Shown piece after piece: positions 14,353-43,035 of a stretch of DNA of 64,000 bases. Location: IMG/VR virus record IMGVR_UViG_3300032782_000001, positions 310,001 through 374,000 of that record; one strand, 5' to 3'. The notes under the pieces were generated by a model. The model did not search any database, had not been told where the DNA came from, and worked only from the letters and a program-made list of their open reading frames with translations. A program made the translations under genes and the position numbers. Position 1 is the stretch's first letter, and each line of letters begins with the position of its first letter.

Positions 14353-15048
14353 TTAAGAATCCATGACGTCGCGAACGAGAAGTTCGTCGTATACGAACAT
14401 GAAATCCTCTCTGGAGAGGACATTAGCATTCACGTGACCTTGGGCCCAATTCCTGAATTTCTGGAGTTGGTCCTCATGATGTTCAGCGTGGAATTTGTCG
14501 ACAGCTTTCAATTCATCTTTATCAGCAAGGGCCCGTTGATGTTCTCGTTCCAACGTTGATTCTATTTCTTCTTTCAATTTATCGAGAACTTCACTCCCAA
14601 CAATGCCTTGAATAGTACGCCAAAAGGCTTTCTTATTGGAAATTGCCGATTTCCAAGCAGAATTAACATCGGCAGCAATAGTCATGTGAGCTGACTCCAT
14701 AATATCTTCAATGAATTGGTTCCACCCAATAATTTTGACAATAGTATGGGATTCCGGAACATCGGCTTCAATATGAAAATGATATTGAGTAACAGTCTGC
14801 ATGGAAGTACCAAACCGGACTTCGATCCTGCAATGAACACTCCGAATCCGAATCAGAACGAATCGGGCAGCGGCTCGGACTACAGAAACTCGCACAGAGT
14901 CCGGGACTACGATTCCCGGTGATAGGGAGTCAAATTTGGAATAGAGACCGCTTATGACTCGCCGATTAAGCAAATCGAGAAACTGAATTCGAGATTTTTG
15001 CGTCTCTTCTTCAATTATTTCAACACGGGATGCAGACCGCCATTCCAT
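14353..15048 (-). CDS. Hypothetical protein with C-terminal VRDVMDS tag
   Basis: 231-aa ORF; -10-like TATTTT 6 nt before the ATG. Confidence 0.65.
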   Translation of the reverse strand: MEWRSASRVEIIEEETQKSRIQFLDLLNRRVISGLYSKFDSLSPGIVVPDSVRVSVVRAAARFVLIRIRSVHCRIEVRFGTSMQTVTQYHFHIEADVPESHTIVKIIGWNQFIEDIMESAHMTIAADVNSAWKSAISNKKAFWRTIQGIVGSEVLDKLKEEIESTLEREHQRALADKDELKAVDKFHAEHHEDQLQKFRNWAQGHVNANVLSREDFMFVYDELLVRDVMDS

Positions 15049-15121
15049 TCAATCAAAATACAACAACATCGATGACAAACGAGCCCTAATCACGCCATCA
15101 ACTCAACAATCGGTTAGAAGG

Positions 15122-15400
15122 TCAGGTCATAATTTCAATCAATGTCAATCGAGCCAATGCTTCTTCTTCCGATCTAGCAATGAAACAAGCATGAACGAAA
15201 TCTGAAGAAGTCCGAAGTCGCATTACAAACACATTCATACCTGCTTCTTCAGCCAATCGGAGGACTTGACCCTCGCGACCTTTCTTTCTGAATTCAGGGT
15301 CCTTCTCCGACCAACTCATGTCGCAATATTCAGCAATGTTTTCTTGATCCCGAAAATCATTCATAAGTCCGGGGTAAGCAATGTGTATGATTTTTGCCAT
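15122..15400 (-). CDS. Hypothetical protein (ends LIEIMT)
   Basis: 92-aa ORF immediately downstream of pyrF. Confidence 0.55.
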   Translation of the reverse strand: MAKIIHIAYPGLMNDFRDQENIAEYCDMSWSEKDPEFRKKGREGQVLRLAEEAGMNVFVMRLRTSSDFVHACFIARSEEEALARLTLIEIMT

Positions 15401-15402
15401 GT

Positions 15403-16107
15403 TTAGACCATGGAAAGCAAGGCTGAACCAATCTCTGCGGCTACAGCTCGAGCTGCGGCTACAGGATTGGCCGCGTCACGAATAGGACGACCAACAACGA
15501 TGAGATCAGCGCCAGCTCGGATAGCAGCAGCAGGCGTAGAAATGCGTTTTTGGTCCCCCGAATCAGAACCCGATGGCCGAATGCCAGGGACCACGATAAA
15601 TGCTTCCGGGCCCAACAACTGGCGAAGAACTGATACTTCAAGAGGAGAACACACGAATCCACGAACCCCACAATCCCAAGCCATTTTGGCAAGACCTGAA
15701 ACCTGATCTTTTACAGGGCGACTAATCCCGGTAACACGGAGGTCTTCATCATTCATTGAAGTCAATACCGTGACCGCCAGAATTTTGGCATTCGCTCCAG
15801 TTGCAGACACAGCCCGTCGCAACATCTCGGGACCACCTGAAGCATGAACTGTCAAATACTTCACTCCATGCTTCATGGCTGATTTCACAGCCCTTTCTAC
15901 GGTCTCTGGTATATCGTGAAGCTTCAAATCCAAGAAAACATCCAAATTTAGATCTCGTCCGATTCGGAGAATGCCTGGCCCAGCAGCCACAAAGAGTTCG
16001 AGACCGATCTTCAAGACACCGATTTCATCTGCGAGCTTCTCTGCGAGAGAGCCCGCCTCGTCAATGGTGGAAACGTCGAGCGGGAGGACGATTCGGCTCT
16101 TAGCCAT
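15403..16107 (-). CDS. pyrF: Orotidine-5'-phosphate decarboxylase
   Basis: FLDLKLHDIPETV, LTVHASGG, VTVLTS, PGIRP, DQKR, VVGRPI. Start placed at ATG 16107 (MAKSRIVLPLD), 5 nt after TATCAT. Confidence 0.95.
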   Translation of the reverse strand: MAKSRIVLPLDVSTIDEAGSLAEKLADEIGVLKIGLELFVAAGPGILRIGRDLNLDVFLDLKLHDIPETVERAVKSAMKHGVKYLTVHASGGPEMLRRAVSATGANAKILAVTVLTSMNDEDLRVTGISRPVKDQVSGLAKMAWDCGVRGFVCSPLEVSVLRQLLGPEAFIVVPGIRPSGSDSGDQKRISTPAAAIRAGADLIVVGRPIRDAANPVAAARAVAAEIGSALLSMV

Positions 16108-16142
16108 TTCTGATGATACAACGAAGTTATCCAAGCGTATCT

Positions 16143-16547
16143 ATGATCATGAAAGTTAAAGTTCAGTCCCAAAAGAAAGAACCAGATTTCAGACCTCCTC
16201 GTAATCGAACTCCTTTTTGGAAGAAATCCATCGATAATGGATTTGAGCTAAGGGCATATCTAATTTCCAACATGAATTTAGATATTTTCAATAAAATGCC
16301 CGAATCTGAAATAGTAATTGAATGTTTTGAACTCGCTATTCTAGTAATTGGCGATAAGTGTAGAACGTGGAATGGGATAGTTATTAGCAGAAACAAAGAA
16401 TGGCTAGCTGGTGAAATGAATTCAGATGGAGAATGGACCAAAGATCCTCCCCAGGCATGCCAAAAATTCATGAAAATAGATAAAATCAAAATGGCCGCGC
16501 AAGAATTGCAACGGCTGCTTATCATTCGTCGTGTCATGGAGTCATAG
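16143..16547 (+). CDS. Hypothetical protein with C-terminal IRRVMES tag
   Basis: Track ORF 16113-16547; first ATG that does not overlap pyrF used as start. Confidence 0.6.
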   Translation: MIMKVKVQSQKKEPDFRPPRNRTPFWKKSIDNGFELRAYLISNMNLDIFNKMPESEIVIECFELAILVIGDKCRTWNGIVISRNKEWLAGEMNSDGEWTKDPPQACQKFMKIDKIKMAAQELQRLLIIRRVMES

Positions 16548-16548
16548 T

Positions 16549-17346: not shown

Positions 17347-17362
17347 GCGAGGAACAAAAAGG

Positions 17363-17725: not shown

Positions 17726-17736
17726 CGAAACATTAC

Positions 17737-18045
17737 TCAGTAAGATGTCTGATGGCAGTGAGGGGAGTCCGGGTTCTTATTCTTGCAGTAAATAGACCAA
17801 GCAGTAGCCCAAGCTTGGGCATCCGTATAACCCGGATTCTTATCTTTGACTTCTTTGACGTACCGTTCAACGTCCTTGGGGACGTTGACAGCCACAGTCT
17901 CTTCTTGAGCGCATTCTTCAGAAGAAAGGATAGAAATCAATTGTGAGATATCTGCCGCAACGAGCCTACGGTCAGGACGAGTCGAGTTCTCGATTTTTGA
18001 CGCAATAACTCGAAGGTGTTCAGCAAACGCTCGCGGGCCATTCAT
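17737..18045 (-). CDS. Hypothetical protein
   Basis: Likely start MNGPRAF at 18045; C-terminal AWATAWSIYCK domain. Confidence 0.6.
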   Translation of the reverse strand: MNGPRAFAEHLRVIASKIENSTRPDRRLVAADISQLISILSSEECAQEETVAVNVPKDVERYVKEVKDKNPGYTDAQAWATAWSIYCKNKNPDSPHCHQTSY

Positions 18046-18088
18046 GCAAATTAGAAGACATGAAAGAATTAAGATTGGGAAGCATAAA

Positions 18089-18577
18089 ATGAATGGACCG
18101 AAATCATTTGTTGGAGTTACAGGACCTGTTGGTCCTGGCTTCATGGGATCAGTCGGGTCTAAGAATTTGCAAGGCGCAAATGGCCCTGTAGGCCCGATGG
18201 GACCTGTAGGACCATTTGGTGCGACCGGACCTACAGGTCCAATGGGTCCTTCTAAAGTCTATTGGTTCTTGGAGTCCGGTGAGATGAGAGAAGCCGTCGG
18301 CCCTAAACCCGATGGTATCACCTGGATACTAGAAGAGTATCAGACCAGAAATTTGGCTATTTTATTCCAATTGGATAGTTCTTCGTACGTCCAACGAATT
18401 TGGTTAAATCATCAGGACATGCTTCAAGATGATGATCCGAAGGGGATCTTATTCGAAAAATACACAGAAATGTATAAGCATGCCCCTATCGATGGAAAAA
18501 TGTCGGCGTTTCTCGTTATGGTAGCAAGGGATTTGAAGAATAATGGATGGACCATATGGCCCATTATGATTAGTTAG
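18089..18577 (+). CDS. Protein with short collagen-like tract (ends IWPIMIS)
   Basis: [22 protein letters not shown]. Confidence 0.65.
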   Translation: MNGPKSFVGVTGPVGPGFMGSVGSKNLQGANGPVGPMGPVGPFGATGPTGPMGPSKVYWFLESGEMREAVGPKPDGITWILEEYQTRNLAILFQLDSSSYVQRIWLNHQDMLQDDDPKGILFEKYTEMYKHAPIDGKMSAFLVMVARDLKNNGWTIWPIMIS

Positions 18578-21803: not shown

Positions 21804-22083
21804 TGCGGGGGTTCGGCATGAAAATACACCCGTTGCTTACGGGTTGCACGTACAGAATTCAGCGTTGAATACAGTATTACAGGATTAGGTCATGGAAAAT
21901 CCATACGATGGTTAAATAGATATTTAAGGAAATAAGAATGAATTATCTCATAACGATGGAAACAAATCAAGAAGCACGGTGTTCTAAAAGTTGCCGGATT
22001 TCCGATTCCTGGAATATTCAAAATTTGCGCATCATTTCCAAGTGTAACGTTGGATCTCCAGAAGTCCAAATTCTGGATTCGTA

Positions 22084-22126
22084 GTCACCACTCGGCACGC
22101 GCCACTCACGCGTGCCATACGGAGAC
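22084..22126 (+). promoter_or_regulatory. Leader hairpin sequestering the RBS of the TROVE-like gene
   Basis: GTCACC-ACTC-GGCACGCG-loop-CGCGTGCC-ATAC-GGAGAC, ending 5 nt before ATG 22131. Confidence 0.5.
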
Positions 22127-22130
22127 CGAC

Positions 22131-23996
22131 ATGCAGAAGGAAAATCTCGGACCTGCTGAGAGGATCATCAACACCATCCTGGCCTATTCGGATCACATGG
22201 TCCATAACCGGCCTGGAGTCGTTTCCCCGGACCCGACGTCGGCGACTGGTGTGAAGTGGGTGTTCGTGACCCACAAGACGGAAGACGGAAAGAAGGTCGT
22301 CTACGCCTTGGACAAGGTTGGCAAGAAGACCATCCGTCGAAAGCTCGGCGTCATGGGCGAGGACCGAAAGGTTCGTGATGACGCCAATCGCGTCATCGGT
22401 GAATATCGAGATGCCGGCATCTTTCCCGAGGTCGCAACTTGGCTTTACGGCCAAGTTGCGGAGGTGTGGAAGATCGATCATGAGTTCGCGGCTCGATGGG
22501 CCAGCTACCAATACGCCCAGGAGCATCGCGACATGAAGGCCGTTCTGGCTGCGTTCATGCTCGTGCAGTCCCGAAAGGGCGATCCTGTGATCGACGATGG
22601 CAAGGTAGCCTTCTACGACGAAGACTTCCGTGACGTCGGCGAGGCTATGATGCTCAGGTACAAGAAGGGCGACAAGCATGGGCTGCGTCCGAAGGACTTG
22701 CTTCGTATTCGGGACGTTCTCATGGTCCCGGGCGTGGCGGACATCAATCGCAAGCTCGGGTTCGGAAAGTCGGCCCGCAAGCCGTTCCTCGGCCGCTGGG
22801 AGAAGGCGGTCGAGAAGTGGTTGAAATTCCGGGAAGTCAATCCGAAAATGTTGGAAGGGCTCATCAAGGAGGGCTACAAGTCCACCGTCATGCAGCTCGC
22901 CCAGCTCATCGGTTACAAGCCGGAGTCGGATAAATTCTTCCATGCGCTTGGGTGGAAGCAGGTTCAGGCTAAGGATGGCCGTCGGGGTCTCGCGATTGGT
23001 CAGGTCCAGAGCGGCACGGACTCATGGGAAGGTATGTCCGAAGCCGAGGTCTGTGAAAAGATCGTGAAGGAAAAGACCGGCTTCAAGCGTCTCATCGGCC
23101 TCGTTCCGAAGGAGGTCGGCATGACTCGCGCCGTGATTGCGGCGGCGATCGAAGCTGGATCCTTGTCCGACAAGGACTTGGTCATCATGTCCGCCACGCT
23201 CGAAGAGCTTGGATTGCTCCAGGACCCGGATGTCCGTAAGCGTTGGGAGAAGGCTCTCAAGGCTGCTGAAGACATGCGGGCCGCAAACATTGCTTCGAGG
23301 GTCAAGTCTAAGGACGTCCAAGAGAAGCTCCAGGAAGCGGCTGACACGGCTGTTCAAAAGGCTGTCGAAGAGGTCAGCAGGGACATGCGTGTCTACTTCA
23401 TGGTCGACATCTCGGGGTCCATGGAAGGTGCAATCGAGGCGGCCAAGGATCACGTGGCGAAATTCCTTCAGGCATTCCCCGAAGACAAGATCCACGTATC
23501 CGTCTTCAACACTATCGGTCGAGAAGTGAAGGTCAAGCACCGTTCGGCTGCGGGAGTGAAGAACGCCTTTGAGGGTATTAGGGCGGAAGGTGGAACTTCA
23601 TATGCAGCAGGCGTAAGGGCCCTCCAAGGCCATAAGCCGCTTGCAAACGAAGATGTTTTGTTCATTTTCATTGGAGATGAGCAAGATAACACCGAACTCG
23701 CGGGTACCATCAGGGCTTCGGGTCTGAACCCCATGGCTTTCGGACTCGTGCCGGTCTTCGCGAAGCATTACGGACGCGGAAACCGCGTGACGACGGCAGC
23801 GTCAGAGCTCAAGATCCCGTGCTTCGAGATCGATGAAAAGACCTTCGCTGACCCGTACGCTATCCCGCGTGCAATCCGGGCTCTCATCGCGGCCACCCCC
23901 GTGAACCGTAGTCCGGAAAAGATCGTTCAGCGTGTCTCGCTCGTAGAGAACATCCTTAAAACGGATCTGATTACGAAGCCGGAGTGGGCTGCCTGA
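22131..23996 (+). CDS. TROVE/Ro60-like helical-repeat protein with C-terminal vWA domain
   Basis: Helical Lys-rich N-terminal region (EFAARWASY..RDMKAVLAAFML; VMQLAQLIGYKP), then vWA MIDAS DISGS, GGTS and IGDEQ. This is the Ro60 architecture. GGAG RBS before ATG 22131. vWA call strong, TROVE call moderate. Confidence 0.65.
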   Translation: MQKENLGPAERIINTILAYSDHMVHNRPGVVSPDPTSATGVKWVFVTHKTEDGKKVVYALDKVGKKTIRRKLGVMGEDRKVRDDANRVIGEYRDAGIFPEVATWLYGQVAEVWKIDHEFAARWASYQYAQEHRDMKAVLAAFMLVQSRKGDPVIDDGKVAFYDEDFRDVGEAMMLRYKKGDKHGLRPKDLLRIRDVLMVPGVADINRKLGFGKSARKPFLGRWEKAVEKWLKFREVNPKMLEGLIKEGYKSTVMQLAQLIGYKPESDKFFHALGWKQVQAKDGRRGLAIGQVQSGTDSWEGMSEAEVCEKIVKEKTGFKRLIGLVPKEVGMTRAVIAAAIEAGSLSDKDLVIMSATLEELGLLQDPDVRKRWEKALKAAEDMRAANIASRVKSKDVQEKLQEAADTAVQKAVEEVSRDMRVYFMVDISGSMEGAIEAAKDHVAKFLQAFPEDKIHVSVFNTIGREVKVKHRSAAGVKNAFEGIRAEGGTSYAAGVRALQGHKPLANEDVLFIFIGDEQDNTELAGTIRASGLNPMAFGLVPVFAKHYGRGNRVTTAASELKIPCFEIDEKTFADPYAIPRAIRALIAATPVNRSPEKIVQRVSLVENILKTDLITKPEWAA

Positions 23997-24176
23997 GTGG
24001 CGTACAAGACGCTGTACGCCGAGGTCAATAAGATCGAATTTCCGGAAGCTTTGGAAGCAGCCATGGAGTTGGACTCCAGGCTCCGGAAATTCGATCCATT
24101 AGACCCGGAAACTCTAAGATCGGCGTTAGTGACGCTGGCCCGGAGAGTCAAAGAACTCGAACACGAGTGGAGTTGA
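23997..24176 (+). CDS. Small hypothetical protein (59 aa)
   Basis: Below the track cutoff. GTG immediately after the upstream stop; MAYKTLYAEVNKIEF...ELEHEWS*; fills the operon gap exactly. Confidence 0.6.
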   Translation: MAYKTLYAEVNKIEFPEALEAAMELDSRLRKFDPLDPETLRSALVTLARRVKELEHEWS

Positions 24177-24177
24177 G

Positions 24178-24471
24178 ATGGGGTGGGCCTCAGGCCACAT
24201 CCAAAAGCTGATTGCGGGTGAAACCGTGCATTTCCGACCCCACGGCAATTCCATGTTGCCGAGGATCAAGTCGGGTCAACTTTGCACGGTTTCACCCGTA
24301 AGTCTGGATGACGTTAAAGTAGGTGACGTCATCCTTTGCAAGGTGCACGGACGCGAATTTCTTCACCTTGTCTCGGCAATCCGTGGTGGTCAATTGCAAA
24401 TCTCGAACAATCACGGGCACATCAACGGGTGGATTGGGCCAAAGTCGGTCTACGGGAAACTGGTGGAATAA
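24178..24471 (+). CDS. S24/S26 peptidase-like small protein
   Basis: GNSMLPRIKSGQ...GDVILCKV..FLHLV. Confidence 0.7.
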   Translation: MGWASGHIQKLIAGETVHFRPHGNSMLPRIKSGQLCTVSPVSLDDVKVGDVILCKVHGREFLHLVSAIRGGQLQISNNHGHINGWIGPKSVYGKLVE

Positions 24472-25493
24472 TGGGCTGGCGGAACCTTCTGCAAGAAAAG
24501 GAAGAACTCATCGTTCTGCCGTGGCTTGGGGGTCGAACGCTCAGGTCCGGTCCACGTGCGTGGCATTTGGACGGGAAGCTCCCTGCTGAACATGGTTGGT
24601 ACACTTTCAAACTCATGGGACGGAAAGCTATCCTCGGTGATTCCTACGACGAGGAATTGGCGAAGGAGCCGTGCGTACAGCCTCCAGGTTCCTTAATGTG
24701 TGAAGTGACTGGCTATCTTGTCGGTGACCGGCTCATCCTAGATAATGCCAATGTGGATCCGGATCCTTCGAAAATTGCGGAACAGTCGGAGACTGTGCAT
24801 CTCATCGAAGATGGACTGGATAGATTCGCTCGTATCGAAGCTGGGCGAGCGTGTGAAGACGGCCCACTCATCTACAGCGGAATGGTGATGCCGTTAGGGC
24901 CTGAGGAGGAAGTCCTCCAAGCATTTCTCGAACAAAAGTCATCTGTAGCAAACATCAAGGGCGTAGTTCCTGCACTGGACGCTGCCTTCCGTATGGAAGT
25001 TTGGCAGCGAATTGAAGCTGCCAAACGACGTGCAGAACTTGAGAGGATTCGCAAAGAAGAGGAAGAGAAGAGGCGTATTGAGGAGAAACGCCGGGAAATT
25101 GTCGAGAAGCTCGGCGACGGAGCTGGTCGAAGGGCAATGGCTGCCATCGATTTCGATGAAGCTGCCAGGGCTGCATTTGTTGTTGGAAATGCTCAGTTCC
25201 TGGATAGTCGGAAGAGCGCTCAAAAAGGCGAGATGGTCGTCCGCTTCCGTCTCGATAATCGTAGATTCGAATGCACCTGTGACAAGTTGACACTTAGAGT
25301 TATTGATGCGGGCATCTGTCTAGTTGATCACCGGACGCACGAGAAGGGTGATGGTTATTTCACGCTCGAAAGTTTACCTGGGGTTATTAGGCAAGCCCAG
25401 CGTGAGGGTAAACTCGTAGTCTTCCGTCGCGTGGACGGAGAAAACTATCCAAGGGGAGGAAATGATGATGACGATGAAGATTACGACGATTGA
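24471..25493 (+). CDS. Coiled-coil protein with putative divergent E2-like C-terminal domain
   Basis: Start ATG overlaps the upstream TAA. DAGICL recalls the E2 active-site GxICL; lies next to the JAB, Ubl and E1 genes. Confidence 0.45.
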   Translation: MGWRNLLQEKEELIVLPWLGGRTLRSGPRAWHLDGKLPAEHGWYTFKLMGRKAILGDSYDEELAKEPCVQPPGSLMCEVTGYLVGDRLILDNANVDPDPSKIAEQSETVHLIEDGLDRFARIEAGRACEDGPLIYSGMVMPLGPEEEVLQAFLEQKSSVANIKGVVPALDAAFRMEVWQRIEAAKRRAELERIRKEEEEKRRIEEKRREIVEKLGDGAGRRAMAAIDFDEAARAAFVVGNAQFLDSRKSAQKGEMVVRFRLDNRRFECTCDKLTLRVIDAGICLVDHRTHEKGDGYFTLESLPGVIRQAQREGKLVVFRRVDGENYPRGGNDDDDEDYDD

Positions 25494-25502
25494 GGTAACA
25501 TC

Positions 25503-26057
25503 ATGAGCATGGAAGCAGGAGTCGTCGTAGGAAAAGACGGTAAGGCAATTCATTGGCATCTTCCGGAAGAGAGGACCGGCGGATCTCTGCCCGATTCTCA
25601 GGCTCTCTGGGATTTCATCTGGAAGAATCGAAATGAAATTATGGGGATCGCCCACAGTCATCCTGGACGGGGACTTCCGGGGCCATCACACACGGATGTA
25701 ACCACTTTTGCCGCCATTGAGGATGGTCTCGGGAAGAGGCTCCTTTGGTGGATTACAAGCGAAGACAAACTTGTAGTCATCAAATGGGTAGGTCCTGGAA
25801 AGCACACTTATTCATCCAGGGAGATCTCGAGTAATGACCCCGAATGGTTAAAGCCACTCCGAAACGCATCTCACGAACTTTCAGAAGCTCGACTCGAAGA
25901 AGTTTGCCAGTATGTAACGGAGACTCACCGGGAAGCTGCTCGACGGGTGTCTGCAGGAAAAGCGGCGCTCGAGGACATGGTAGTGTCAGTCCTCAACGGG
26001 CTCCCCCATGCCGATCCAGATGAGATTCGGAAGAAGATCCTGGATTCGGTGAAATAA
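25503..26057 (+). CDS. JAB/MPN+ metallopeptidase
   Basis: N-terminal Glu (MEAG) and HSHP...PSHTD JAMM motif. Confidence 0.85.
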   Translation: MSMEAGVVVGKDGKAIHWHLPEERTGGSLPDSQALWDFIWKNRNEIMGIAHSHPGRGLPGPSHTDVTTFAAIEDGLGKRLLWWITSEDKLVVIKWVGPGKHTYSSREISSNDPEWLKPLRNASHELSEARLEEVCQYVTETHREAARRVSAGKAALEDMVVSVLNGLPHADPDEIRKKILDSVK

Positions 26058-26102
26058 ATCCAAAACTTGGGAACGTAAGTTCCTCTTCTAAGGAGAATCG
26101 AA

Positions 26103-26372
26103 ATGAACGAAATGGTAATCGAGGCAGGACAGGCGAGGGTCAACATCACGTGGCAGGGTCAGAACGGGGACATGCCTGGCGCTGTCCATTACGACTCGAC
26201 GGACGGCGACGTCCGACAGTGGGTCACGGAGGCCGTTCGCACGGGTGGGGTGCCTGGTATTCGTGCTGACGCCGCCGCGAATTTCACGGACTTCGTCGTG
26301 GAGAGGTTCCCGTCGACGCAGGATAGGCCCTTCAACCTGATCCAGGTCAGGCCGAAGACGCCGTTCGGTTGA
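26103..26372 (+). CDS. Ubiquitin-like small protein (putative)
   Basis: 89 aa; strong AAGGAG RBS; ends LIQVRPKTPFG with a terminal Gly; between JAB and E1. Confidence 0.65.
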   Translation: MNEMVIEAGQARVNITWQGQNGDMPGAVHYDSTDGDVRQWVTEAVRTGGVPGIRADAAANFTDFVVERFPSTQDRPFNLIQVRPKTPFG

Positions 26373-26800
26373 TGGAGAAGAATTCGGAAGAAGAAGCCTG
26401 GAAACAGGCTGTCGACCTCTGGAAAAAACTCGCCCAGATCCGAGGCGTGGCGTACTCCGCCATGTTCGCAGTCAGGGGTGAGATGATAGAAGAAGAAAAA
26501 GCGGAACTCCTTGAGGACCTCGAAAAAGTCCTCAAGGAGACTGCTGTTGACTTCCCCAATGGGGTGGATTGGAACGCTCACGAAAACGGTGAGTTCAAGC
26601 TTCTTCCTAAGAAGATAGAGGATTACATGGAAGCCAAGATCAAGACAACTGGATTCAAAGTGGAAATTCAGTTGAACGAATATGAGGCAGATTCCATTCG
26701 TCGGGCCGTAATCGGCCGTGATGATCGGGAAGCTCAGAAGCTTATGCAACAACTTTCCGAGACCGTTTGGAAGGCTGTGGTTAACGCTGTAAACAAGTGA
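26372..26800 (+). CDS. Hypothetical helical protein
   Basis: TGATG coupling with the Ubl gene; overlaps the E1 start. Confidence 0.6.
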   Translation: MEKNSEEEAWKQAVDLWKKLAQIRGVAYSAMFAVRGEMIEEEKAELLEDLEKVLKETAVDFPNGVDWNAHENGEFKLLPKKIEDYMEAKIKTTGFKVEIQLNEYEADSIRRAVIGRDDREAQKLMQQLSETVWKAVVNAVNK

Positions 26801-27764: not shown

Positions 27765-27778
27765 GTAGTCTCGTAGTT

Positions 27779-27811
27779 TTTGACCCGACCAAGATTCTTG
27801 GTCGGGTCAAA
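27779..27811. terminator. Perfect 16-bp inverted repeat between convergent units (bidirectional terminator)
   Basis: TTTGACCCGACCAAGA-T-TCTTGGTCGGGTCAAA. Confidence 0.8.
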
Positions 27812-27817
27812 TCGTCT

Positions 27818-28261
27818 TTAGGATTCCATGACATCTCGGATTTCGGTCATGGATTCTTTGGACCAATATTCTTTGAGCTTCTTGGTTGCATAAGCCGCCC
27901 ACCTTCGAATTTTCGGGCGACCTTTTATGCATTGTGTATATTTATATTCAGAAAAACTGTTTTGGTAATTTTCATGATGATAACAGAAATCGAAAGAAAA
28001 AGAACAGCCATTTCCGTTGCCATAAATGGCAACGGAACCATTAATCTTGCCCACTTCCTTTACTCCGAGATGAATATCTGCGGACACAATCGTTCGGAAG
28101 TCGAAATTATCTCGATAAATCCGGCAATTGGAAACTTGGAAACCAGCTCGTTCTAAGGGACGAATGGCAGCTTTAAGGCAATCTTCACCATAAGCGATAG
28201 ATATATCCCTCTTAGGTGAGGGCCTAACGTCTTTCTTGTGCCTGAGTTTCCTGATGGTCAT
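27818..28261 (-). CDS. Hypothetical protein with C-terminal IRDVMES tag
   Basis: 147-aa ORF. Confidence 0.65.
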   Translation of the reverse strand: MTIRKLRHKKDVRPSPKRDISIAYGEDCLKAAIRPLERAGFQVSNCRIYRDNFDFRTIVSADIHLGVKEVGKINGSVAIYGNGNGCSFSFDFCYHHENYQNSFSEYKYTQCIKGRPKIRRWAAYATKKLKEYWSKESMTEIRDVMES

Positions 28262-30106: not shown

Positions 30107-30379
30107 TTAGCTGTTCATCACTTCCTCGACAATGAGTTCATCGAGGGAGATACTATGAATACTATGAAGATATCTGTCGGTCCCGTAGGTATAGCTCTTG
30201 ATGATCTTTTGAAGACCATTAATGGCGTCTTCCGGAGAAATTCCATCGGCCTGAAACTCCCGTACGTACGGGATGGTGAAAGCCGTGTATGGGCGGACAG
30301 TATACGGGACCTTCTTGGAAAGAGCCAACATATCACGACTGACAGTCACGACAACCGTGATAGAAGGTCGATCAGACAT
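30107..30379 (-). CDS. Hypothetical protein with C-terminal VEEVMNS tag
   Basis: 90-aa ORF coupled to the upstream gene. Confidence 0.6.
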   Translation of the reverse strand: MSDRPSITVVVTVSRDMLALSKKVPYTVRPYTAFTIPYVREFQADGISPEDAINGLQKIIKSYTYGTDRYLHSIHSISLDELIVEEVMNS

Positions 30380-30776: not shown

Positions 30777-31400
30777 ATGCACGATTTGCGAGACGTCTTC
30801 ATCCATGATCCGATTCGACATGCTGGGATTTATGATGCAAATCCCGGAGACAACTGGTGGATCATGATGGATAAAGGAGAACCAAAAAGGGTAACCATCG
30901 GTTCTCAACCAAAGCCCGCGACCACAGAAGACGGTGAAATGACACTCGCGTTCCACGCTAACATTCGGATTCCATATTTCGAAATCGTGGACGAGGTTGA
31001 AATTCAAAAGAAGTTAGCAGAACTTCTGGTGCACGCGGCAGAAAAGCGTGGATGTTCAAAAGCCGTCAGTATCTTCCAAGTCCTGGAGAAACTTAGGGAA
31101 GGACTTGGAAACAAGCCTCTTCGGCATGTCTTGGCATCCAGGAAAACCTTCTTGGCAAAAATCCGAGATCCTTACGAGGAGGCACTTGGACCCAACATTA
31201 GAGCGCCTAAGAAATGGGCACAATTCTTCTACGAACTGAAAGGAACCAAGCCAGTTTGGAATGAATCACTGCCCGAAGGGATGTTTATTGGCACCACCAA
31301 TCAAGAAGAAGTGGGATGGGTGACGTGCTCGGGCGGCTGGTTTACCCCTGTAGGAGCTGCTGTGAATGAATCAGGAGTCTTTGGAGTCCACCTGAGTTAG
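30777..31400 (+). CDS. Hypothetical protein, possible truncated capsid-protein paralog
   Basis: C-terminal half aligns by eye with the C-terminal half of the capsid protein. Confidence 0.5.
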   Translation: MHDLRDVFIHDPIRHAGIYDANPGDNWWIMMDKGEPKRVTIGSQPKPATTEDGEMTLAFHANIRIPYFEIVDEVEIQKKLAELLVHAAEKRGCSKAVSIFQVLEKLREGLGNKPLRHVLASRKTFLAKIRDPYEEALGPNIRAPKKWAQFFYELKGTKPVWNESLPEGMFIGTTNQEEVGWVTCSGGWFTPVGAAVNESGVFGVHLS

Positions 31401-32086
31401 ACTCGGCCCATTTTGGCAGCGTAGGCCTGAATCAAGGTCAGGTAATCTCGATTCGGAGCCCCTGCGGGAGTCTGGCTGCTGGTGAACGAAATTGCTTCGT
31501 TCACATTCATGCCGTGGGCTCGTATCATGTAGCAAGCCACGACTGCTCCAGTCCTGTCTGCCCCAAGAGAACAATGGACATAAATAGCTCGAGCAGGGTC
31601 ATGAAGAAGTTCCGTAATCCGGTCCACCAAACCACACAGGTCCCAACCGGGAGACGTGAGAAAGACATGAGGATCTTGACCTTGACCTACCCCTTCAATA
31701 GGCCACCACATGAAATTGGCAGTCCTAGAAGAAGAAGAGGTACGGATTACACAAGGATGTAATTCCTCGGCATCGTAATCTGGTTGTAGGTATGGAGGCC
31801 AATACGATGGTCCCCATAAATCTGGAAGTCCAAGAGAAGACAATTCCGCCTTTAGCATAGGATGTTCACCCGTGCTGTCAATAAGGGACACTATAGTCAT
31901 AGTTGTCCCTGCGAGCTTAGAATCAATCCTATCCGCGATACCGGAATAGGCGAAAGTCCCATCTCCGAGCATCGGGAATGGTCCGCGAATGAACAAACTA
32001 CTGTTAAAACTATCCACTAGTGCTACACGAGATGGATCAAAAACTCTCACATTCAAATTGTTGGAAAAAACTTTTACGAATGACAC
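31397..32086 (-). CDS. Dual-specificity/tyrosine phosphatase
   Basis: HCSLGADRTG (CX5R motif). Confidence 0.85.
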   Translation of the reverse strand: MSFVKVFSNNLNVRVFDPSRVALVDSFNSSLFIRGPFPMLGDGTFAYSGIADRIDSKLAGTTMTIVSLIDSTGEHPMLKAELSSLGLPDLWGPSYWPPYLQPDYDAEELHPCVIRTSSSSRTANFMWWPIEGVGQGQDPHVFLTSPGWDLCGLVDRITELLHDPARAIYVHCSLGADRTGAVVACYMIRAHGMNVNEAISFTSSQTPAGAPNRDYLTLIQAYAAKMGRV

Positions 32087-32553: not shown

Positions 32554-33357
32554 TCATATTAAAATGTGTTCTTCTGACGTCGGACTGCCATAGTATTTAG
32601 CTTTATTAACTCGACATTCAATGTTTCTGGACACGCGAATCCAGCATCGAGTGTGAGTGTGGCCGGCAAGAACGACGACGTGTCGTTTATTCCTACCGTT
32701 CATGACTCGTTCGATCATGCGACCCATTGTCACATTCGTGTTGTATGGAAGCCAGAATTTCTCCATTAAAGTCCCCACTGCCCTAGTAGCCTCTACCCAA
32801 GGTGGGAAATGGGTAAGAACGTATATTGTTTTGAAATTCTCTAGTGCGGAAGTAAGTGAGGCTTCGAGAAGGTCCGCGGACGCCTGAGCGAGGGATCGGA
32901 AAGCATCAACTCTGGCTTCCATACCGGATAAAGTTAGAAAATCATAGGTTTGGAACCAGTCAGTCGTATATCGGAGCCAAGATGGATCTCCCCGCCGGGC
33001 GTCGTACCAACCCTCAGTACCTATGAGAGCTACTTCTTCGTTCAGAGAAACAACGCCAGACTCCGTCATCCAATGCAAATTAGGATATGTAGCCGAAAGC
33101 CTTCGTATATCTCCGTGGACGCTCGCGAGCGTCCTTCCGTGATAATCATGATTCCCCAAAACGAAATAAATCGGGCACGACAAGGAAGCCGCGAACTTAC
33201 CAAGACAATTCTCTAAATGAGAACCGTTACTTATATCCCCCGTCAAGAAAATTCCAGAGGGGCTTTCCACTCGTAAGTGACGCACGAGATTTCGAGTCGC
33301 CCACGGAAGAGCGAAATTTAAATGCGTATCCGTGAGCCACACGTACTTCTGGCGCAC
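32554..33357 (-). CDS. Calcineurin-like metallophosphoesterase
   Basis: DTH, GDIS, GNHD, THFPP, GHTH. Confidence 0.9.
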   Translation of the reverse strand: MRQKYVWLTDTHLNFALPWATRNLVRHLRVESPSGIFLTGDISNGSHLENCLGKFAASLSCPIYFVLGNHDYHGRTLASVHGDIRRLSATYPNLHWMTESGVVSLNEEVALIGTEGWYDARRGDPSWLRYTTDWFQTYDFLTLSGMEARVDAFRSLAQASADLLEASLTSALENFKTIYVLTHFPPWVEATRAVGTLMEKFWLPYNTNVTMGRMIERVMNGRNKRHVVVLAGHTHTRCWIRVSRNIECRVNKAKYYGSPTSEEHILI

Positions 33358-34043: not shown

Positions 34044-34709
34044 TCATACGTTCGGAATAGCCCAGTCAATAGGCTTAGACCCCATACGAATAAGTGCTTC
34101 GTTTGCTTTCGAAAAAGGTTTGGATCCAAAAAAGCCGGCTGCCGCCGACATAGGACTCGGATGAGCCGCCGACACGATTGCATGCCTCCCAACATCAATG
34201 AGGAAACATTTGGATTTAGCAGGCTTCCCCCAAAGGAGGAATACAATAGGCTCTTCCCGCGCGGAAAGCTTTCGAATAACCTCGTCCGTAAATTCTTCCC
34301 AACCTTGTCCCTGATGAGATCCCGGATTCCCAGCCCGAACCGTGAGGGTCGTGTTGAGTAAAAAAACTCCTTGCTTCACCCAAGAATCAAGACAGCCATG
34401 ATTCGGCGGCTTGATACCGAGGTCTGATTCAAGCTCCTTGTAAATGTTCCTGAGGCTCGGAGGAATGGGGACACCCGAACGCACTGAAAAACATAGTCCA
34501 TGAGCTTGGCCGGGCCCATGGTAAGGATCCTGACCCAGGATGACCACCTTCACGTCGTCAAAGGGAGTTCCAAACGCATTGAAGACGTCCTCGTGAGGTG
34601 GATAAACCGTCTCCTTCTCTCGTTCCTTCTGGGTGAAAGCTTCTAGTCTCTTGAAATAATGCTTGGAGAACTCCGAGCGAAGGAACGGCTTCCAGGACTC
34701 ATGGATCAT
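34044..34709 (-). CDS. ung: Uracil-DNA glycosylase, family 1
   Basis: GQDPYH, GLCFS, PPSLRNI, LLNTTLTV, HPSPMS. Confidence 0.96.
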   Translation of the reverse strand: MIHESWKPFLRSEFSKHYFKRLEAFTQKEREKETVYPPHEDVFNAFGTPFDDVKVVILGQDPYHGPGQAHGLCFSVRSGVPIPPSLRNIYKELESDLGIKPPNHGCLDSWVKQGVFLLNTTLTVRAGNPGSHQGQGWEEFTDEVIRKLSAREEPIVFLLWGKPAKSKCFLIDVGRHAIVSAAHPSPMSAAAGFFGSKPFSKANEALIRMGSKPIDWAIPNV

Positions 34710-37037: not shown

Positions 37038-37511
37038 TTAGCTCTCCAAGACGTCAGCGCAAACCAAGAAATGATCGAGGTTCAAATTCTCGAGTGTTTC
37101 ACATAGGTTTTCAACATCACGAGTTCCAACGATCACGAACTGCTCTCGGTCGTCAGTGACGCCAGCGAAGTAGAACTGATACTCGTCATCTTCAGAGGCA
37201 AGCGCGTCGAGAGCCTCATCAACGTCCTCTTCGGTGTCGACATAATCGGCAATCCAACGAGCGGAGGAGTCAGTGTATGTGCGCAACCAAGTCACAGCCA
37301 AGTCCACTGACTGACTAGGACAAGGAGAAAACGCGAAAAAATCCACCATCTGCGGACGATCGAAGCACCCGTCCCAAAGCCGAGCGAACGCCTTTTCCAG
37401 ACGTTCCAACCGGAGGACCTCGTAATTTCCGAATGCGTATTGGAGAAGCGAGTCGCAAAATGGCTTGGGGCTTTCGATCTGTGACATGCAGACGGGTACG
37501 GAGTGGATCAT
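37038..37511 (-). CDS. Hypothetical protein with C-terminal CADVLES tag variant
   Basis: 157 aa; GAGGAG RBS. Confidence 0.65.
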   Translation of the reverse strand: MIHSVPVCMSQIESPKPFCDSLLQYAFGNYEVLRLERLEKAFARLWDGCFDRPQMVDFFAFSPCPSQSVDLAVTWLRTYTDSSARWIADYVDTEEDVDEALDALASEDDEYQFYFAGVTDDREQFVIVGTRDVENLCETLENLNLDHFLVCADVLES

Positions 37512-37662: not shown

Positions 37663-38556
37663 TCAGCGAGTGACGATCAGGCGCACCAACCCGCGCGGGT
37701 TGTAGGCTCCAATGCCGAGGTTCTCGAACATGCTAAAACCAATGGTCCTCTCTTCCGGGTTGTCTGCGCTGAGGACCGTGAGCTCCGTGCGCACCGGAAT
37801 GCGACCGAAGTGCTCAGGCTCGCAGCAGCAGTAGACCACGCCCTTGGGGACGAGACGCGAGACGATGAACTGGGCATTCCAGCCCGTGCTCATCATGCCG
37901 GTCTTCCAGAGCGTCGCCTGCGACTCGATGTCGAGGACGTCGCGACCGAACTTGCGGATATCCGCGTAGTCGGTTGCGTTCATGTAGACGCGAGCAACCC
38001 GGAGGTCGTGCGTCTCGATCTCGGCGAACGCGTCCGCGAGGACGGCCGGTGAAATCGGGGCCACCACCGGGATGTCCGGGTTCGTCCCGCCCGGGAGCGA
38101 GTCGAATCCGTTGACCGCGATGGCGTCCAGGATGCTGAAGACGCGATCGTCCTCGGCCGCCTGAATCTGGGCCTTGCCCAAGTCCTGCATACGCTTGAGG
38201 AGGTCGTATCGACGCTCCTTGATCTGCGTGAGAGGCGCCTTGGGGAGCGCCGCGATCTCGAAGAGCGGGAAGATCACGCGACGCGGCTTCATCACCGCCG
38301 TGATCGACTCACCTTCCTCACCAATGACGTACGCGACGACATCGGGATCCTTGTCGTAGATCGGGAGAGCACCATCCGGCAGCTGCTCCACGAGGAACGT
38401 CTTGCGGCCGACTGAAGAATAGTCGCGCCTTTCACGGAGGGGCTGAATCATCGAGGCCGCGAGGCGCTTACGCCCAGCCGACGTCCCGATGAAGCGGTCG
38501 ACGACCTGCTCCTTGACCGTGTTGTCTACTACCTGTACGCCAAATTGACCGTTCAT
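37663..38556 (-). CDS. Major capsid protein (HK97 fold)
   Basis: 297 aa with strongly GC3-biased codons; last gene of the head cluster, followed by a terminator. RLAASM..PL...LFEIA.LP...IQAAED pattern recalls Bxz1-like large-phage capsids (from memory). Confidence 0.85.
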   Translation of the reverse strand: MNGQFGVQVVDNTVKEQVVDRFIGTSAGRKRLAASMIQPLRERRDYSSVGRKTFLVEQLPDGALPIYDKDPDVVAYVIGEEGESITAVMKPRRVIFPLFEIAALPKAPLTQIKERRYDLLKRMQDLGKAQIQAAEDDRVFSILDAIAVNGFDSLPGGTNPDIPVVAPISPAVLADAFAEIETHDLRVARVYMNATDYADIRKFGRDVLDIESQATLWKTGMMSTGWNAQFIVSRLVPKGVVYCCCEPEHFGRIPVRTELTVLSADNPEERTIGFSMFENLGIGAYNPRGLVRLIVTR

Positions 38557-40789: not shown

Positions 40790-40838
40790 GATTCAGGCTC
40801 TCCTACGGGTTCGAATTTTATCAATGTCCTAAAATCCT

Positions 40839-42392
40839 TCAGGCAACCGAAGCAACCCTGCCCTTCATTGAAAGGAAGGTTTTCTCGGCAGCTGAGAGAT
40901 GACGGCCGAGCTTGAGGCTACAAGCCGCGAGAAAGGAGATCTCACTAGGGAAATTCTTCATGGGACCGACGGACATTGCAAGCTTATATAGCATCGGAGG
41001 ATGGCTCCGGGATGCCACTCGATCTTCGATCCATGAAAGGATTATCAAATCTTTTGCGGTCAAACCAGAAGCCCGGATTGCAATTGGACCGCGCCTCACA
41101 ATTTTGCTTACTGCAGTTGCCCAGTTGATAAGATGAGTATTACCAGGGAAACGTGCAGCAACACGCTGATTGAAGGCTTGAGAAGCCCTCATCATATTAT
41201 TGTTGCCGGCATCAACACTAGGTGCCGGAGCTGCAGTCCCAACGTCTTCAGGCTTCGGTGCAAGCTTATCAGAAAGACCCTTTACAATCATCTCCATAAG
41301 CTGCTGCTGAGCTTTATCAACCATTTCATCCAAGCTATTAGGCTTAGATTCTGCAGCATCCGAATTACTTGAGTCTGTATCGCCAGAATCAGATGGACTT
41401 GTACCTGCGTTATCAGGAGGAGCACCGCCGAGATCCACATCATCTTCTGCGGGGGCCTGTTGTCCCCCTTCTTGTTGATCTCCTTGCTGTGCAGTCTTCA
41501 CAGAGGCAGCTTTCATGATGCCGTCAAAGTCAATAATGTCACGACGGAGCTCATAAATTTGATTGGATTCCTGCAATTTTGTAGCAATCGCGGAAGATTC
41601 CGGGTTGAGAATCTGGCGTCGAACAGCCCCCCGGAACGCGGGATTGCGGACCCAAGATGCTTCAATGAATTGATTAGAGTTAGGAACTTGAACGTGTCCG
41701 ATCAATTCAGCAATAGGGAAAGTAACCCCATCAGCATCGGATGCGAGTTGACCCTTTCCAACAAATTGAACACAAGGACACAACTGACTGTCATCAGCAG
41801 CAACATTGCCGCAAGCCGTGCAGATGGTAAATAGGGAGATGCATCCCATTGACATGGCTGAAATTTGACCGCCAAGAATATCCTGAATGAGGATCTTGTG
41901 TTTACGATCGGTTGCAACCAGAATATCGATATAACAAGTTTTCCCAAGATCCCTGGCAATGGCGTCTACAATAAATCCTTTGGAAAGTTCAGGGATTTGA
42001 ATATGCTCGAGATAATTGTGAGCACCAATAAAAGTCCGGTATGTTGAAAGAAGGAGAGACCGCTCCCAGGCATCACCGTTGTTGTTGATGATTTCTTGGC
42101 ATTCCGGCTTGATGCGGAAATCCGGCCATCGAACATCGATTTGACAACCGCGAAGCATTTGTCGGCCGGTCTTGGATCCCTTCGGAGCATAAGCATCGAC
42201 GCTTGCTACGATAGTGGCGTGCGAAAGCAAATACTGTTTCGGGTCACATTTACGAAGAATAGTTTTGGCAATTCTGCCAACATAATCTTTAGGAACCGCA
42301 CCCTCATGTTGGCTGCGCAATTCCTCCATCCACTCGTCAAACGCCACGTTTGAACGAGAAACAATCGCGTTGGCGAAGCGCTTGAATGCCAT
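40839..42392 (-). CDS. Prohead protease-like protein with Zn-ribbon insert (putative)
   Basis: EH...GFIVDA...SMGC...CTACGN...CPC...IEASWVRNPAF; positioned upstream of the scaffold. Confidence 0.65.
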   Translation of the reverse strand: MAFKRFANAIVSRSNVAFDEWMEELRSQHEGAVPKDYVGRIAKTILRKCDPKQYLLSHATIVASVDAYAPKGSKTGRQMLRGCQIDVRWPDFRIKPECQEIINNNGDAWERSLLLSTYRTFIGAHNYLEHIQIPELSKGFIVDAIARDLGKTCYIDILVATDRKHKILIQDILGGQISAMSMGCISLFTICTACGNVAADDSQLCPCVQFVGKGQLASDADGVTFPIAELIGHVQVPNSNQFIEASWVRNPAFRGAVRRQILNPESSAIATKLQESNQIYELRRDIIDFDGIMKAASVKTAQQGDQQEGGQQAPAEDDVDLGGAPPDNAGTSPSDSGDTDSSNSDAAESKPNSLDEMVDKAQQQLMEMIVKGLSDKLAPKPEDVGTAAPAPSVDAGNNNMMRASQAFNQRVAARFPGNTHLINWATAVSKIVRRGPIAIRASGLTAKDLIILSWIEDRVASRSHPPMLYKLAMSVGPMKNFPSEISFLAACSLKLGRHLSAAEKTFLSMKGRVASVA

Positions 42393-42444
42393 GGGTTCCC
42401 ATCAAGGAGACGCGCATAGAAATCCGACGATCCTTGACGTACCT

Positions 42445-43035
42445 ATGAGTATGAAAGCCGCAGAAATGAAAGCGAGGTTCGCTCAGGTATCACTCGTTTC
42501 CGTCAAGGTTGTCTTCACGACCAAGCATTACGGCTCAGTAAAAGGTCTGTCCCCTTCTGATGTCCAGAAGTGGCAACGAATTGGCGCCAAAGAAGTTCGT
42601 CAATTCGTATGGCCTAAAGTGGTTGTTAGAGGCCCGGACGGGGATAAAAGTTATTCCCTCACGTGGATGAACCCTCACGCTCCACCGTTCCAGACCAAAC
42701 TCAGCGCAGGTGCAATGTCAGAACCTGAAAAGTTTTTCGTGAAATGTGCGCTCGGGAAAGCGCAAAAACTCCCCGAAGGGATTCGGGGATATGCTCGACA
42801 ATTCGGTCAAGCACTTCAAAACAACATCGAATCTCGAGTCATGAATGCGTGTCGAGCGAGAGGTTTAACCGAAAAAGTCACATCCATCTGGCGGAAAGCC
42901 CGACGTGGACATGCATCCAAGGAACTCCAAGCAACCTTGGAGAAACATTTCAAAGATCTGACGGATTATGACGTCAAAGAGACGTGGAAAACCGTCAAAA
43001 GGCTGCACGCCGTGCGGGACGTGATGGAATCTTAG
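42445..43035 (+). CDS. Hypothetical protein with C-terminal VRDVMES tag, inverted inside the head operon
   Basis: Track ORF 42370-43035; first non-overlapping ATG used as start. Confidence 0.65.
   Translation: MSMKAAEMKARFAQVSLVSVKVVFTTKHYGSVKGLSPSDVQKWQRIGAKEVRQFVWPKVVVRGPDGDKSYSLTWMNPHAPPFQTKLSAGAMSEPEKFFVKCALGKAQKLPEGIRGYARQFGQALQNNIESRVMNACRARGLTEKVTSIWRKARRGHASKELQATLEKHFKDLTDYDVKETWKTVKRLHAVRDVMES

What the first reader, a model, noticed from the sequence alone, without database searches (positions are those of the whole stretch)
14353..43035. Shared C-terminal tag [VI]x[DE]VM[EDN]S-stop on unrelated orphan proteins
C-termini: LLVRDVMDS (14353-15048), IIRRVMES (to 16547), EIRDVMES (27818-28261), LIVEEVMNS (30107-30379), LVCADVLES (37038-37511), AVRDVMES (to 43035). 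Weaker: LIEIMT (15122-15400) and IWPIMIS (to 18577). The protein bodies show no visible similarity, the genes lie on both strands, and codons differ (terminal Ser TCT/TCA/TCC/AGC; stops TAA/TAG), so conservation is at the protein level. No recognisable enzyme or head gene carries it. Inference: a phage-wide address label, such as a docking signal for a hub protein, a degron or substrate signal for the ARC-like ATPase or Ubl system, or a localisation or packaging signal.
Basis: partly seen in the sequence, partly recalled or inferred. Interest (0 to 1): 0.87.

Follow-up and report, generated by a model that had tools for sequence, protein, structure and literature searches.

The report
Megaphage-wide shared C-terminal protein tail
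About one in ten proteins of this 436-kb wetland megaphage, mostly tiny orphans with unrelated bodies, end in the same short tail (…[IV]-V-R-x-[VI]-M-[ED]-S-stop), which behaves like an address label read by one still unknown receptor, most plausibly for loading them into the phage head.

Summary
Five window ORFs end in [VI]M[EDN]S (0.005 expected) and a sixth in VLES. Their bodies show no detectable similarity and the tail codons differ. The two weaker cases (LIEIMT, PIMIS) are not members.

The tail is longer than four residues: [C/x]-[DE]-E-x-[VIL]-V-[RK]-x-[VI]-[M>H]-[ED]-[S>x]-COOH. It is predicted helical, and the chain always stops one residue after the acidic residue.

I read 150 kb of the source contig (a phage G-like megaphage of 436 kb). 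About 20 to 22 of roughly 190 genes carry the tail. Eleven of them form a tandem array of new mini zinc-finger proteins fused directly to it.

Relatives carry the tail on non-homologous small ORFs. It recurs on a fast-evolving gene next to the prohead protease, partly as a genome-specific M or H variant. It is absent from a 485-kb relative, from bacterial genomes and from cultured phages.

Function is untested. I favour a common docking tail (about 0.7), with the procapsid interior as the likeliest destination (about 0.35). The rivals are an unfoldase or degron signal, docking on a host hub, and a purely structural zinc-finger helix.

Coupling to the phage's Ubl/E1 operon is disfavoured. Only one of the 19 other E1-bearing contigs carries tails.

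The parts
14353..15048 (-). TAG1, a 231-aa orphan ending ...YDELLVRDVMDS. Residues 112-119 (about 14692-14715) are a second, internal copy of the tail (FIEDIMES).
   Evidence: matrix score 26.7
16113..16547 (+). TAG2, a 144-aa orphan ending ...LLIIRRVMES. It is a lone plus-strand gene between minus-strand genes.
   Evidence: score 24.9
27818..28261 (-). TAG3, a 147-aa basic orphan ending ...MTEIRDVMES. It is convergent with the Ubl/E1 operon and followed by a hairpin.
   Evidence: score 24.0
30107..30379 (-). TAG4, a 90-aa orphan ending ...LDELIVEEVMNS.
   Evidence: score 23.2
37038..37511 (-). TAG5, a 157-aa acidic orphan about 150 nt downstream of the major capsid gene, ending ...DHFLVCADVLES (L instead of M).
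   Evidence: score 19.2. Small tail-bearing genes sit downstream of the capsid gene in relatives L005, L013, L016, L021, L024 and L047.
42370..43035 (+). TAG6, ending ...LHAVRDVMES. The likely start is 42445 (196 aa, as in the public gene call P0019). It is divergent from the prohead protease gene and belongs to a fast-evolving family that keeps the tail in about 20 relatives.
   Evidence: AlphaFold2 gives pLDDT 78, and the C-terminal helix 174-195 carries the tail.
40839..42392 (-). Prohead protease-like protein (517 aa). This is context: it is the conserved neighbour of the TAG6 family and a candidate reader.
37663..38556 (-). Major capsid protein, phage G gp27-like. This is context and a candidate reader.
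15122..15400 (-). It is not a member (out of register, negative score).
   Evidence: score -16.6
18044..18577 (+). It is not a member.
   Evidence: score -4.3

Best explanation
The tail is a modular C-terminal docking element. It is a short helix whose last turn and free chain end ([VIL]-V-[RK]-x-[VI]-[M/H]-[ED]-x-COOH) fit one common receptor. It has been spread onto at least 20 small, fast-turning-over accessory proteins of this megaphage lineage. These include a new family of mini C2HC zinc fingers and several unrelated larger orphans.

Shown: the motif, its strict terminal position, its presence on unrelated bodies, its phage-wide spread, its lineage restriction and its predicted helical state.

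Inferred: that it is read by a single partner.

Favoured but unproven destination: the inside of the procapsid (scaffold/protease core or capsid inner face). The carriers would then be loaded into the very large head and delivered with the DNA. This would work like the shared C-terminal helix-and-hook of the 80alpha scaffold and SaPI1 CpmB, or the T4 capsid targeting sequence.

My odds are about 0.7 for 'common docking tail' and about 0.35 for 'head loading'.
For: 1. Statistics and terminal strictness.

2. Unrelated bodies and differing codons.

3. Positions that were not used to select the tails are also conserved in relatives. Position -7 is V or I in 31 of 43, -8 is V, L or I in 29 of 43, and -10 is E in 21 of 43.

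4. A fast-evolving gene family placed head-to-head with the prohead protease keeps the tail in about 20 relatives, while the rest of the protein drifts to about 20% identity. Small tail-bearing genes also recur downstream of the capsid gene. In relatives, tail density is about 4 per 100 kb in protease-centred loci. It is about 0.8 per 100 kb in the vWA-centred loci other than L071, which lies beside the head module, and 0 in 18 of 19 E1-centred loci.

5. Carriers are small (median about 100 aa against 195 aa for other genes, P = 0.003), are orphans, and are replaced by non-homologous small ORFs in the other tail-rich phage. This is the pattern expected of a variable cargo or effector set with a conserved signal.

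6. The M and H variants at position -3 are partly genome-specific. This phage has about 20 M and no credible H (the single H-type ORF lies antisense inside the vWA gene). L008 and L021 have H,H. L013, L016, L036, L071 and L101 are all M. That is what co-evolution with one reader predicts.

7. AlphaFold2 puts the tail in a terminal helix in both a large carrier and a zinc-finger carrier.

8. Precedent: a 16-residue C-terminal helix plus hook is shared by two otherwise different proteins and docks into the capsid protein (PMC5644958).
Against: - No binding, proteomic or localisation data exist, and the phage is uncultured.
- Most carriers in this phage are not next to head genes. The largest cluster lies 80 kb away.
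- The association with the head module in relatives is partly an ascertainment effect, because most fetched loci were centred on the protease.
- The capsid protein is 90-96% identical in relatives with and without tails, so the capsid protein alone does not explain who has tails.
- TAG6 is transcribed opposite to the head operon.
- In zinc-finger carriers the helix follows the last cysteine directly and might simply be part of that fold.
- M/H co-variation is imperfect: L005, L034, the contig of L008/L077, and that of L011/L115 are mixed.
- Hydrophobic moment is not significantly above that of other C-termini.
Confidence: 0.35

Rival explanations
1. Degron or unfoldase-recognition tag. The tail is recognised, like ssrA or the SspB tail, by a protease or AAA+ unfoldase. 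The reader would be the phage's own Cdc48/Mpa-class ATPases or a host machine. Small accessory proteins would then be removed or remodelled at a set time.
For: - Recognition strictly at the chain end is typical of degrons, and the motif is never internal.
- The phage encodes a Cdc48/Mpa-class AAA+ protein in the window and a second AAA protein at about contig position 262 kb.
- Carriers look like short-lived accessory proteins.
Against: - The window AAA protein has no close relative in any other IMG/VR contig, including tail-bearing ones. That search finds only close relatives.
- No protease partner was identified.
- The polar acidic ending is unlike known bacterial C-degrons (from my own knowledge of ssrA and MuA).
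- A degron does not explain the conserved tail gene next to the prohead protease.
Confidence: 0.2
2. Docking onto a host hub such as RNA polymerase, ClpX, a chaperone or the ribosome. Many different phage effectors would be brought to, or would block, one host machine.
For: - Many unrelated small proteins share one short terminal helix, and the carriers turn over quickly.
- The lineage-specific M and H variants could track different hosts.
Against: - No bacterial genome among 185,579 species encodes the zinc-finger-plus-tail module. That scan covered only this module, not the bare tail on other bodies, so it is at most weak evidence on whether host proteins use this signal.
- The host is unknown.
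- This reading does not explain the link with the protease gene.
Confidence: 0.15
3. No address function. The tail is just the last helix of a small zinc-finger or helical domain that has been duplicated and shuffled, so the similarity reflects common descent of a roughly 35-residue C-terminal domain.
For: - Eleven carriers form one tandem paralogous family with the pattern CxxC-x11-13-H-x4-C fused to the tail.
- In the model the helix starts at the last cysteine.
- In the TAG6 family the conserved stretch extends about 20 residues upstream, to an invariant Trp.
Against: - Five window carriers lack the Cys/His ligands altogether.
- Their bodies are unrelated.
- An ordinary domain does not require the chain to end exactly one residue after the acidic residue in about 60 proteins.
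- Codons have diverged fully, so any shuffling is ancient and the end has been kept by selection.
Confidence: 0.12
4. Adaptor dock for the phage's ubiquitin-like conjugation system. Like an F-box or RING, the tail would tie variable target-binding modules to the E2/E1 machinery encoded at 24.3-27.4 kb.
For: - The window encodes a JAB peptidase, a beta-grasp-like protein ending in Gly, a ThiF-type E1 and two vWA proteins in the middle of the window's tail genes.
- The only other tail-rich contig also has 5-6 tails within 10 kb of its E1.
Against: - Eighteen other huge-phage contigs with the same E1 operon have no tail in 350 kb around it.
- Many tail-bearing contigs were not found with the vWA protein as query.
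Confidence: 0.06
5. Chance, or a DNA-level feature such as a repeat, a terminator or a ribosome-binding site for the next gene.
For: ATG-GAG contains a GGAG that could act as a Shine-Dalgarno sequence in the tandem array.
Against: - Synonymous codons differ.
- Three of the six window tails have no downstream gene in the same direction.
- The H-type and N-type tails lack GGA.
- P is about 1e-14.
Confidence: 0.01

Closest known systems
C-terminal helix-and-hook (RIIK motif) shared by the phage 80alpha scaffolding protein and SaPI1 CpmB
   Same: A short terminal amphipathic helix plus a few-residue hook at or next to the chain end is shared by otherwise different proteins. It docks them into a cleft of the HK97-fold capsid protein inside the procapsid (PMC5644958).
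   Different: - That motif is basic (RIIK) rather than acidic.
- It is carried by two proteins, not 20 or more.
- There is no zinc finger.
- Binding is demonstrated there and only inferred here.
T4 capsid targeting sequence of the internal proteins (my own knowledge; reviews listed)
   Same: A roughly 10-residue peptide on several unrelated small proteins directs them into the prohead core. The cargo is ejected with the DNA and includes anti-defence proteins.
   Different: The T4 signal is N-terminal and is cut off by the prohead protease after a Leu/Ile-x-Glu site. Here the tail is C-terminal and nothing shows cleavage.
Encapsulin cargo-loading peptides (my own knowledge)
   Same: A short C-terminal peptide on unrelated cargo proteins binds the inner face of an HK97-fold shell.
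   Different: The consensus is different (Gly/Ser-rich with Leu/Ile), the peptide is extended rather than helical, and the system is not a virus.
C-terminal degrons and tethering tails (ssrA LAA, the SspB tail that binds ClpX; my own knowledge)
   Same: The free chain end is recognised and the tag is transferable.
   Different: Those sequences are non-polar or basic, and they are read by host proteases. No protease link was found here.
SEC-C metal-binding motif at the extreme C-terminus of SecA and unrelated proteins (my own knowledge)
   Same: A tiny zinc-binding module at the very end of unrelated proteins serves as a docking element.
   Different: The ligand pattern is different (CxCx8C[HC]), and there is no helix ending in [VI]M[ED]S. 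Pfam finds no such match here.
Poxvirus ankyrin/PRANC (F-box-like) gene families (my own knowledge)
   Same: A large viral family of variable proteins shares a short C-terminal helical dock for one cellular machine.
   Different: Those are eukaryotic viruses, the dock is about 40 residues long, and the partner (Skp1) is known.

Membership tests
Capsid-interior targeting tails (80alpha SP/CpmB type) | A short terminal helix plus a hook at the chain end, shared by non-homologous proteins of one phage system | tested here: met
   Predicted terminal helices, unrelated bodies and strict chain end.
Capsid-interior targeting tails (80alpha SP/CpmB type) | The carrier is found inside procapsids and the tail contacts the capsid or scaffold protein | not testable with these tools
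   The phage is uncultured, there is no virion proteome, and no complex prediction tool was available.
Capsid-interior targeting tails (80alpha SP/CpmB type) | The scaffolding protein itself carries the motif | tested here: inconclusive
   The 437-aa protein between the protease and capsid genes ends ...LWDRPQ and has no tail. The tail-bearing TAG6 family is largely helical in its C-terminal half and lies beside the protease gene, but on the opposite strand, and some relatives lack it.
T4-type capsid targeting sequence | N-terminal position followed by a prohead-protease site | tested here: not met
   The motif is exclusively C-terminal.
ssrA-like C-degron | A non-polar last two or three residues read by ClpX, ClpA or Tsp | tested here: not met
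   The last three residues are M-[ED]-S.
Pup / ubiquitin-like modifiers | A C-terminal Gly-Gly(-Gln/Glu) or Gly used for conjugation | tested here: not met
   The tails end in [ED]-S. The window's separate Ubl candidate ends ...PFG.
Known zinc-ribbon or zinc-finger Pfam families | A significant profile match | tested here: not met
   Only sub-threshold knuckle hits with E of at least 0.013. A profile search of 1.84 billion representatives returns 11 small proteins, all of them this new type.
   For the six window carriers there is none. Outside the window, 11 carriers are paralogues over a roughly 35-residue C-terminal zinc-finger module.

The most novel reading that the evidence does not exclude
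The tail is the dock of a phage-encoded adaptor system. Dozens of variable mini-domains (zinc fingers and others) would bind different host targets and, through the common tail, hand them to one phage machine. That machine would be the Cdc48/Mpa-class unfoldase and/or the Ubl-conjugation operon. This would be a bacteriophage counterpart of F-box, RING or PRANC families.
Probability: 0.08. Interest if true: 0.9.

Novelty: new variant of a known kind. Interest (0 to 1): 0.72.

Why it matters
Short transferable address peptides are known for a few phage proteins (T4 internal proteins, 80alpha/SaPI1 scaffolds). I know of no phage in which about a tenth of the proteome shares one strictly terminal signal.

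If the tail is a loading or docking code, four things follow:
1. It gives a handle on roughly 40 or more orphan proteins of an uncultured megaphage at once, because they would share a destination.
2. It defines a testable receptor-peptide pair that co-varies (M against H) between lineages.
4. It adds a new mini zinc-finger family.

If it is only a domain remnant, it is still a clear case of extreme selection on a chain end.

Tried and rejected
- **DNA repeat or ribosome-binding-site explanations.** Rejected on codon differences and context.
- **Link with TAA/TAG stops.** Rejected, because tails outside the window mostly end with TGA.
- **Narrow DNA pattern scan of IMG/VR** (R-D-V-M-[DE]-S with a TAR stop). 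It found only the three window copies and wrongly suggested that the tails are confined to the window. Walking the contig corrected this.
- **Paralogy of the window carriers.** None found.
- **Internal duplication in TAG1.** The two halves are not similar.
- **Homologues of TAG1 and of the TAG6 family in 5.8 billion proteins.** One (itself) and five respectively.
- **Fold and feature searches.** PDB and BFVD fold search of the TAG6 model gave nothing at E below 0.1. ESM Atlas gave no lead.
- **Promoter k-mer search in 84 intergenic regions.** No recurrent motif, so no temporal class could be assigned.
- **Public reads.** Only fragmentary contigs; the source sequence is confirmed, with no information on the tails.
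- **Relatives in annotated collections.** LR745208 (the whole 485 kb) has no tail. The Tunturi_5 structural region has none. No cultured phage has the zinc-finger module.
- **Co-occurrence with vWA, AAA and E1 genes.** Not supported.
- **Conservation of the protease N-terminal domain against tail status.** Only a small difference (about 80% against 74% identity), not separable from phylogeny.
- **Phage G literature.** Nothing on such a motif.


Full report
**What the window is.** The window is positions 310,004-374,003 of a 436,316-bp contig (IMG/VR UViG_3300032782_000001, also JGI Ga0335082_10000001). It comes from a wetland metagenome. It is a tailed phage. The genes identified are:
- terminase 50648-52606, portal 48032-49834 and prohead protease-like 40839-42392;
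- major capsid protein 37663-38556, which matches phage G gp27 (PDB 6wkk, E = 4e-59);
- a clamp loader and a Cdc48/Mpa-class AAA+ ATPase;
- two vWA proteins;
- an operon with a JAB peptidase, a small protein ending in Gly and a ThiF-type E1.

No close DNA relative exists among deposited phages.

**Checking the observation.** All six strong C-termini are at the stated coordinates. Serine, valine and stop codons differ, so the conservation is in the protein. In a curated set of 89 window genes, [VI]M[EDN]S ends five proteins. It occurs once in 19,471 internal positions, which gives 0.005 expected at C-termini (P about 2e-14). None of 403 non-gene ORFs ends that way.

BLASTP among the carriers finds nothing except the tail, and Pfam and PHROGs give nothing significant. 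TAG1 is alone among 5.8 billion proteins. The only internal copy of the motif lies inside TAG1 itself (FIEDIMES, residues 112-119). This suggests an old fusion of two carriers, although the two halves are not similar.

**The tail is longer than four residues and is phage-wide.** Right-aligned tails show conservation back to about position -12. The pattern is [C/x]-[DE]-E-x-[VIL]-V-[RK]-x-[VI]-[M>H]-[ED]-[S>x], then the chain end.

I walked along the contig with exact-protein look-ups and assembled 150.5 kb. A scoring matrix made from the six window tails alone then found ten more C-termini outside the window, where about 0.2 were expected over the whole gene set. Scanning all ORFs gives 20-22 carriers among about 190 genes:
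- six in the window;
- eleven in a tandem array 38-44 kb to the left of the window;
- singles elsewhere.

The 7-residue core occurs nine times in 46,923 residues, always followed by exactly one residue and never internally. A 485-kb relative has six internal copies by chance and none terminal. An earlier narrow DNA scan had suggested confinement to the window. That was an artefact of requiring TAA or TAG stops.

**Two kinds of carrier.** The array genes encode 54-130-aa proteins in which a CxxC-x11-13-H-x4-C pattern runs straight into the tail, for example ...GCPHC-IVRDVMES.

A profile of this module searched against 1.84 billion representative proteins returns only eleven small proteins. All of them match at the extreme C-terminus, and several come from this phage. 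No bacterial species genome, no other JGI metagenome contig and no cultured phage has the module.

AlphaFold2 predicts short strands followed by a terminal helix that is the tail (pLDDT 63 overall and about 80 in the helix). The window carriers lack the ligand pattern, and they are larger and unrelated. In the TAG6 family model (pLDDT 78) the tail is the end of a 22-residue terminal helix. Neither PDB nor BFVD has a similar fold.

**Relatives.** Fifty-six IMG/VR loci share the protease. Their capsid proteins are mostly 90-96% identical to the window's.

In about twenty of them a gene placed head-to-head with the protease ends in the tail (VMES, VMDS, IMES; variants VHES, VFES, VHDF), while the rest of that protein has drifted to about 20% identity. 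Small cysteine-containing tail genes also recur several kb downstream of the capsid gene. Positions not used for picking these tails (-7, -8, -10, -1) are conserved as well.

Position -3 is either M or H, and the choice is partly genome-specific. This fits co-evolution with one reader, but some genomes are mixed.

The tail is absent from the whole 485-kb LR745208 genome (capsid protein 76% identical) and from the Tunturi_5 structural region.

**Candidate readers.** The E1 operon is conserved in 19 other huge-phage contigs, but only one of them has tails nearby. That contig (3300012980_000004) has five or six tails in 20 kb, on small ORFs that are not homologous to the window's carriers. The AAA ATPase has no close relative elsewhere, and the vWA protein's relatives mostly lack tails nearby. 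These machines are therefore not obligatory partners, although a lineage-specific link cannot be excluded.

The repeated placement beside the prohead protease and the capsid gene points to the head. This is partly a sampling effect, and most carriers in this phage lie elsewhere.

**Interpretation.** The data establish a modular element that depends on the chain end, is kept by strong selection on many unrelated small orphans, and is restricted to one megaphage lineage. The simplest reading is a docking tail for a single reader (about 0.7).

The best-documented analogue is the 16-residue helix-and-hook shared by the 80alpha scaffold and SaPI1 CpmB, which docks into the capsid protein (PMC5644958). 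The T4 capsid targeting sequence and encapsulin loading peptides work on the same principle (my own knowledge).

I therefore favour loading of a variable set of small proteins into the very large head (about 0.35). After that come an unfoldase or degron signal (0.2), docking on a host hub (0.15), a purely structural zinc-finger helix (0.12) and an adaptor dock for the Ubl system (0.06). None of these was tested directly. The decisive experiments and computations are listed separately.

Noticed in passing
22050-27381 (+): Ubiquitin-like conjugation operon: vWA protein, 59-aa and 385-aa unknowns, JAB peptidase (25503-26057), an 89-aa protein ending ...KTPFG (26103-26372), a 143-aa unknown and a ThiF-type E1 (26797-27381). 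The E1 is 44-66% identical in 19 other IMG/VR contigs of 16-536 kb.
   Followed up: partly
3359-4855 (+): Single-module AAA+ ATPase of the Cdc48/p97/Mpa class (E = 5e-87 to Cdc48; full-length match to the mycobacterial proteasomal ATPase). A second AAA gene lies about 48 kb to the left of the window.
   Followed up: partly
37663-38556 (-): The major capsid protein is 90-96% identical in about 50 IMG/VR contigs whose neighbouring head genes are only 40-65% identical. The capsid protein is unusually frozen.
   Followed up: partly
14692-14715 (-), inside TAG1: An internal second copy of the tail (FIEDIMES) in the middle of a 231-aa carrier. This is possibly a fusion of two former carriers, but the two halves show no similarity.
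   Followed up: yes
11518-13551 (+): A phage-encoded protein with a PBP-type peptidoglycan glycosyltransferase domain (Pfam Transgly, E = 3e-44).
   Followed up: no
15403-16134 (-), 34044-34709 (-), 31397-32086 (-), 32554-33357 (-): Orotidine-5'-phosphate decarboxylase, a uracil-DNA-glycosylase-family protein, a dual-specificity phosphatase and a metallophosphoesterase lie among the tail genes.
   Followed up: no
about 27775-27812: A perfect G+C-rich hairpin followed by an A-run directly after the TAG3 stop, where TAG3 converges with the E1 operon. It looks like a two-way terminator.
   Followed up: no
18044-18577 (+): A small protein with a collagen-like Gly-X-Y repeat (PHROG tail-fibre hits to the repeat only).
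   Followed up: no
whole window and flanks: Many genes have no recognisable Shine-Dalgarno sequence upstream of their start. No recurrent promoter-like k-mer was found in 84 intergenic regions.
   Followed up: partly
L101 (ENA scaffold GROS21-1...4825), 3401-3616, 6141-6362 and 6663-6839: A 6.9-kb contig from a different metagenome carries two tail-bearing small genes among its ten called genes, plus a third tail-ending ORF outside the calls. The tail system therefore exists in phages beyond the protease-defined clade sampled here.
   Followed up: partly
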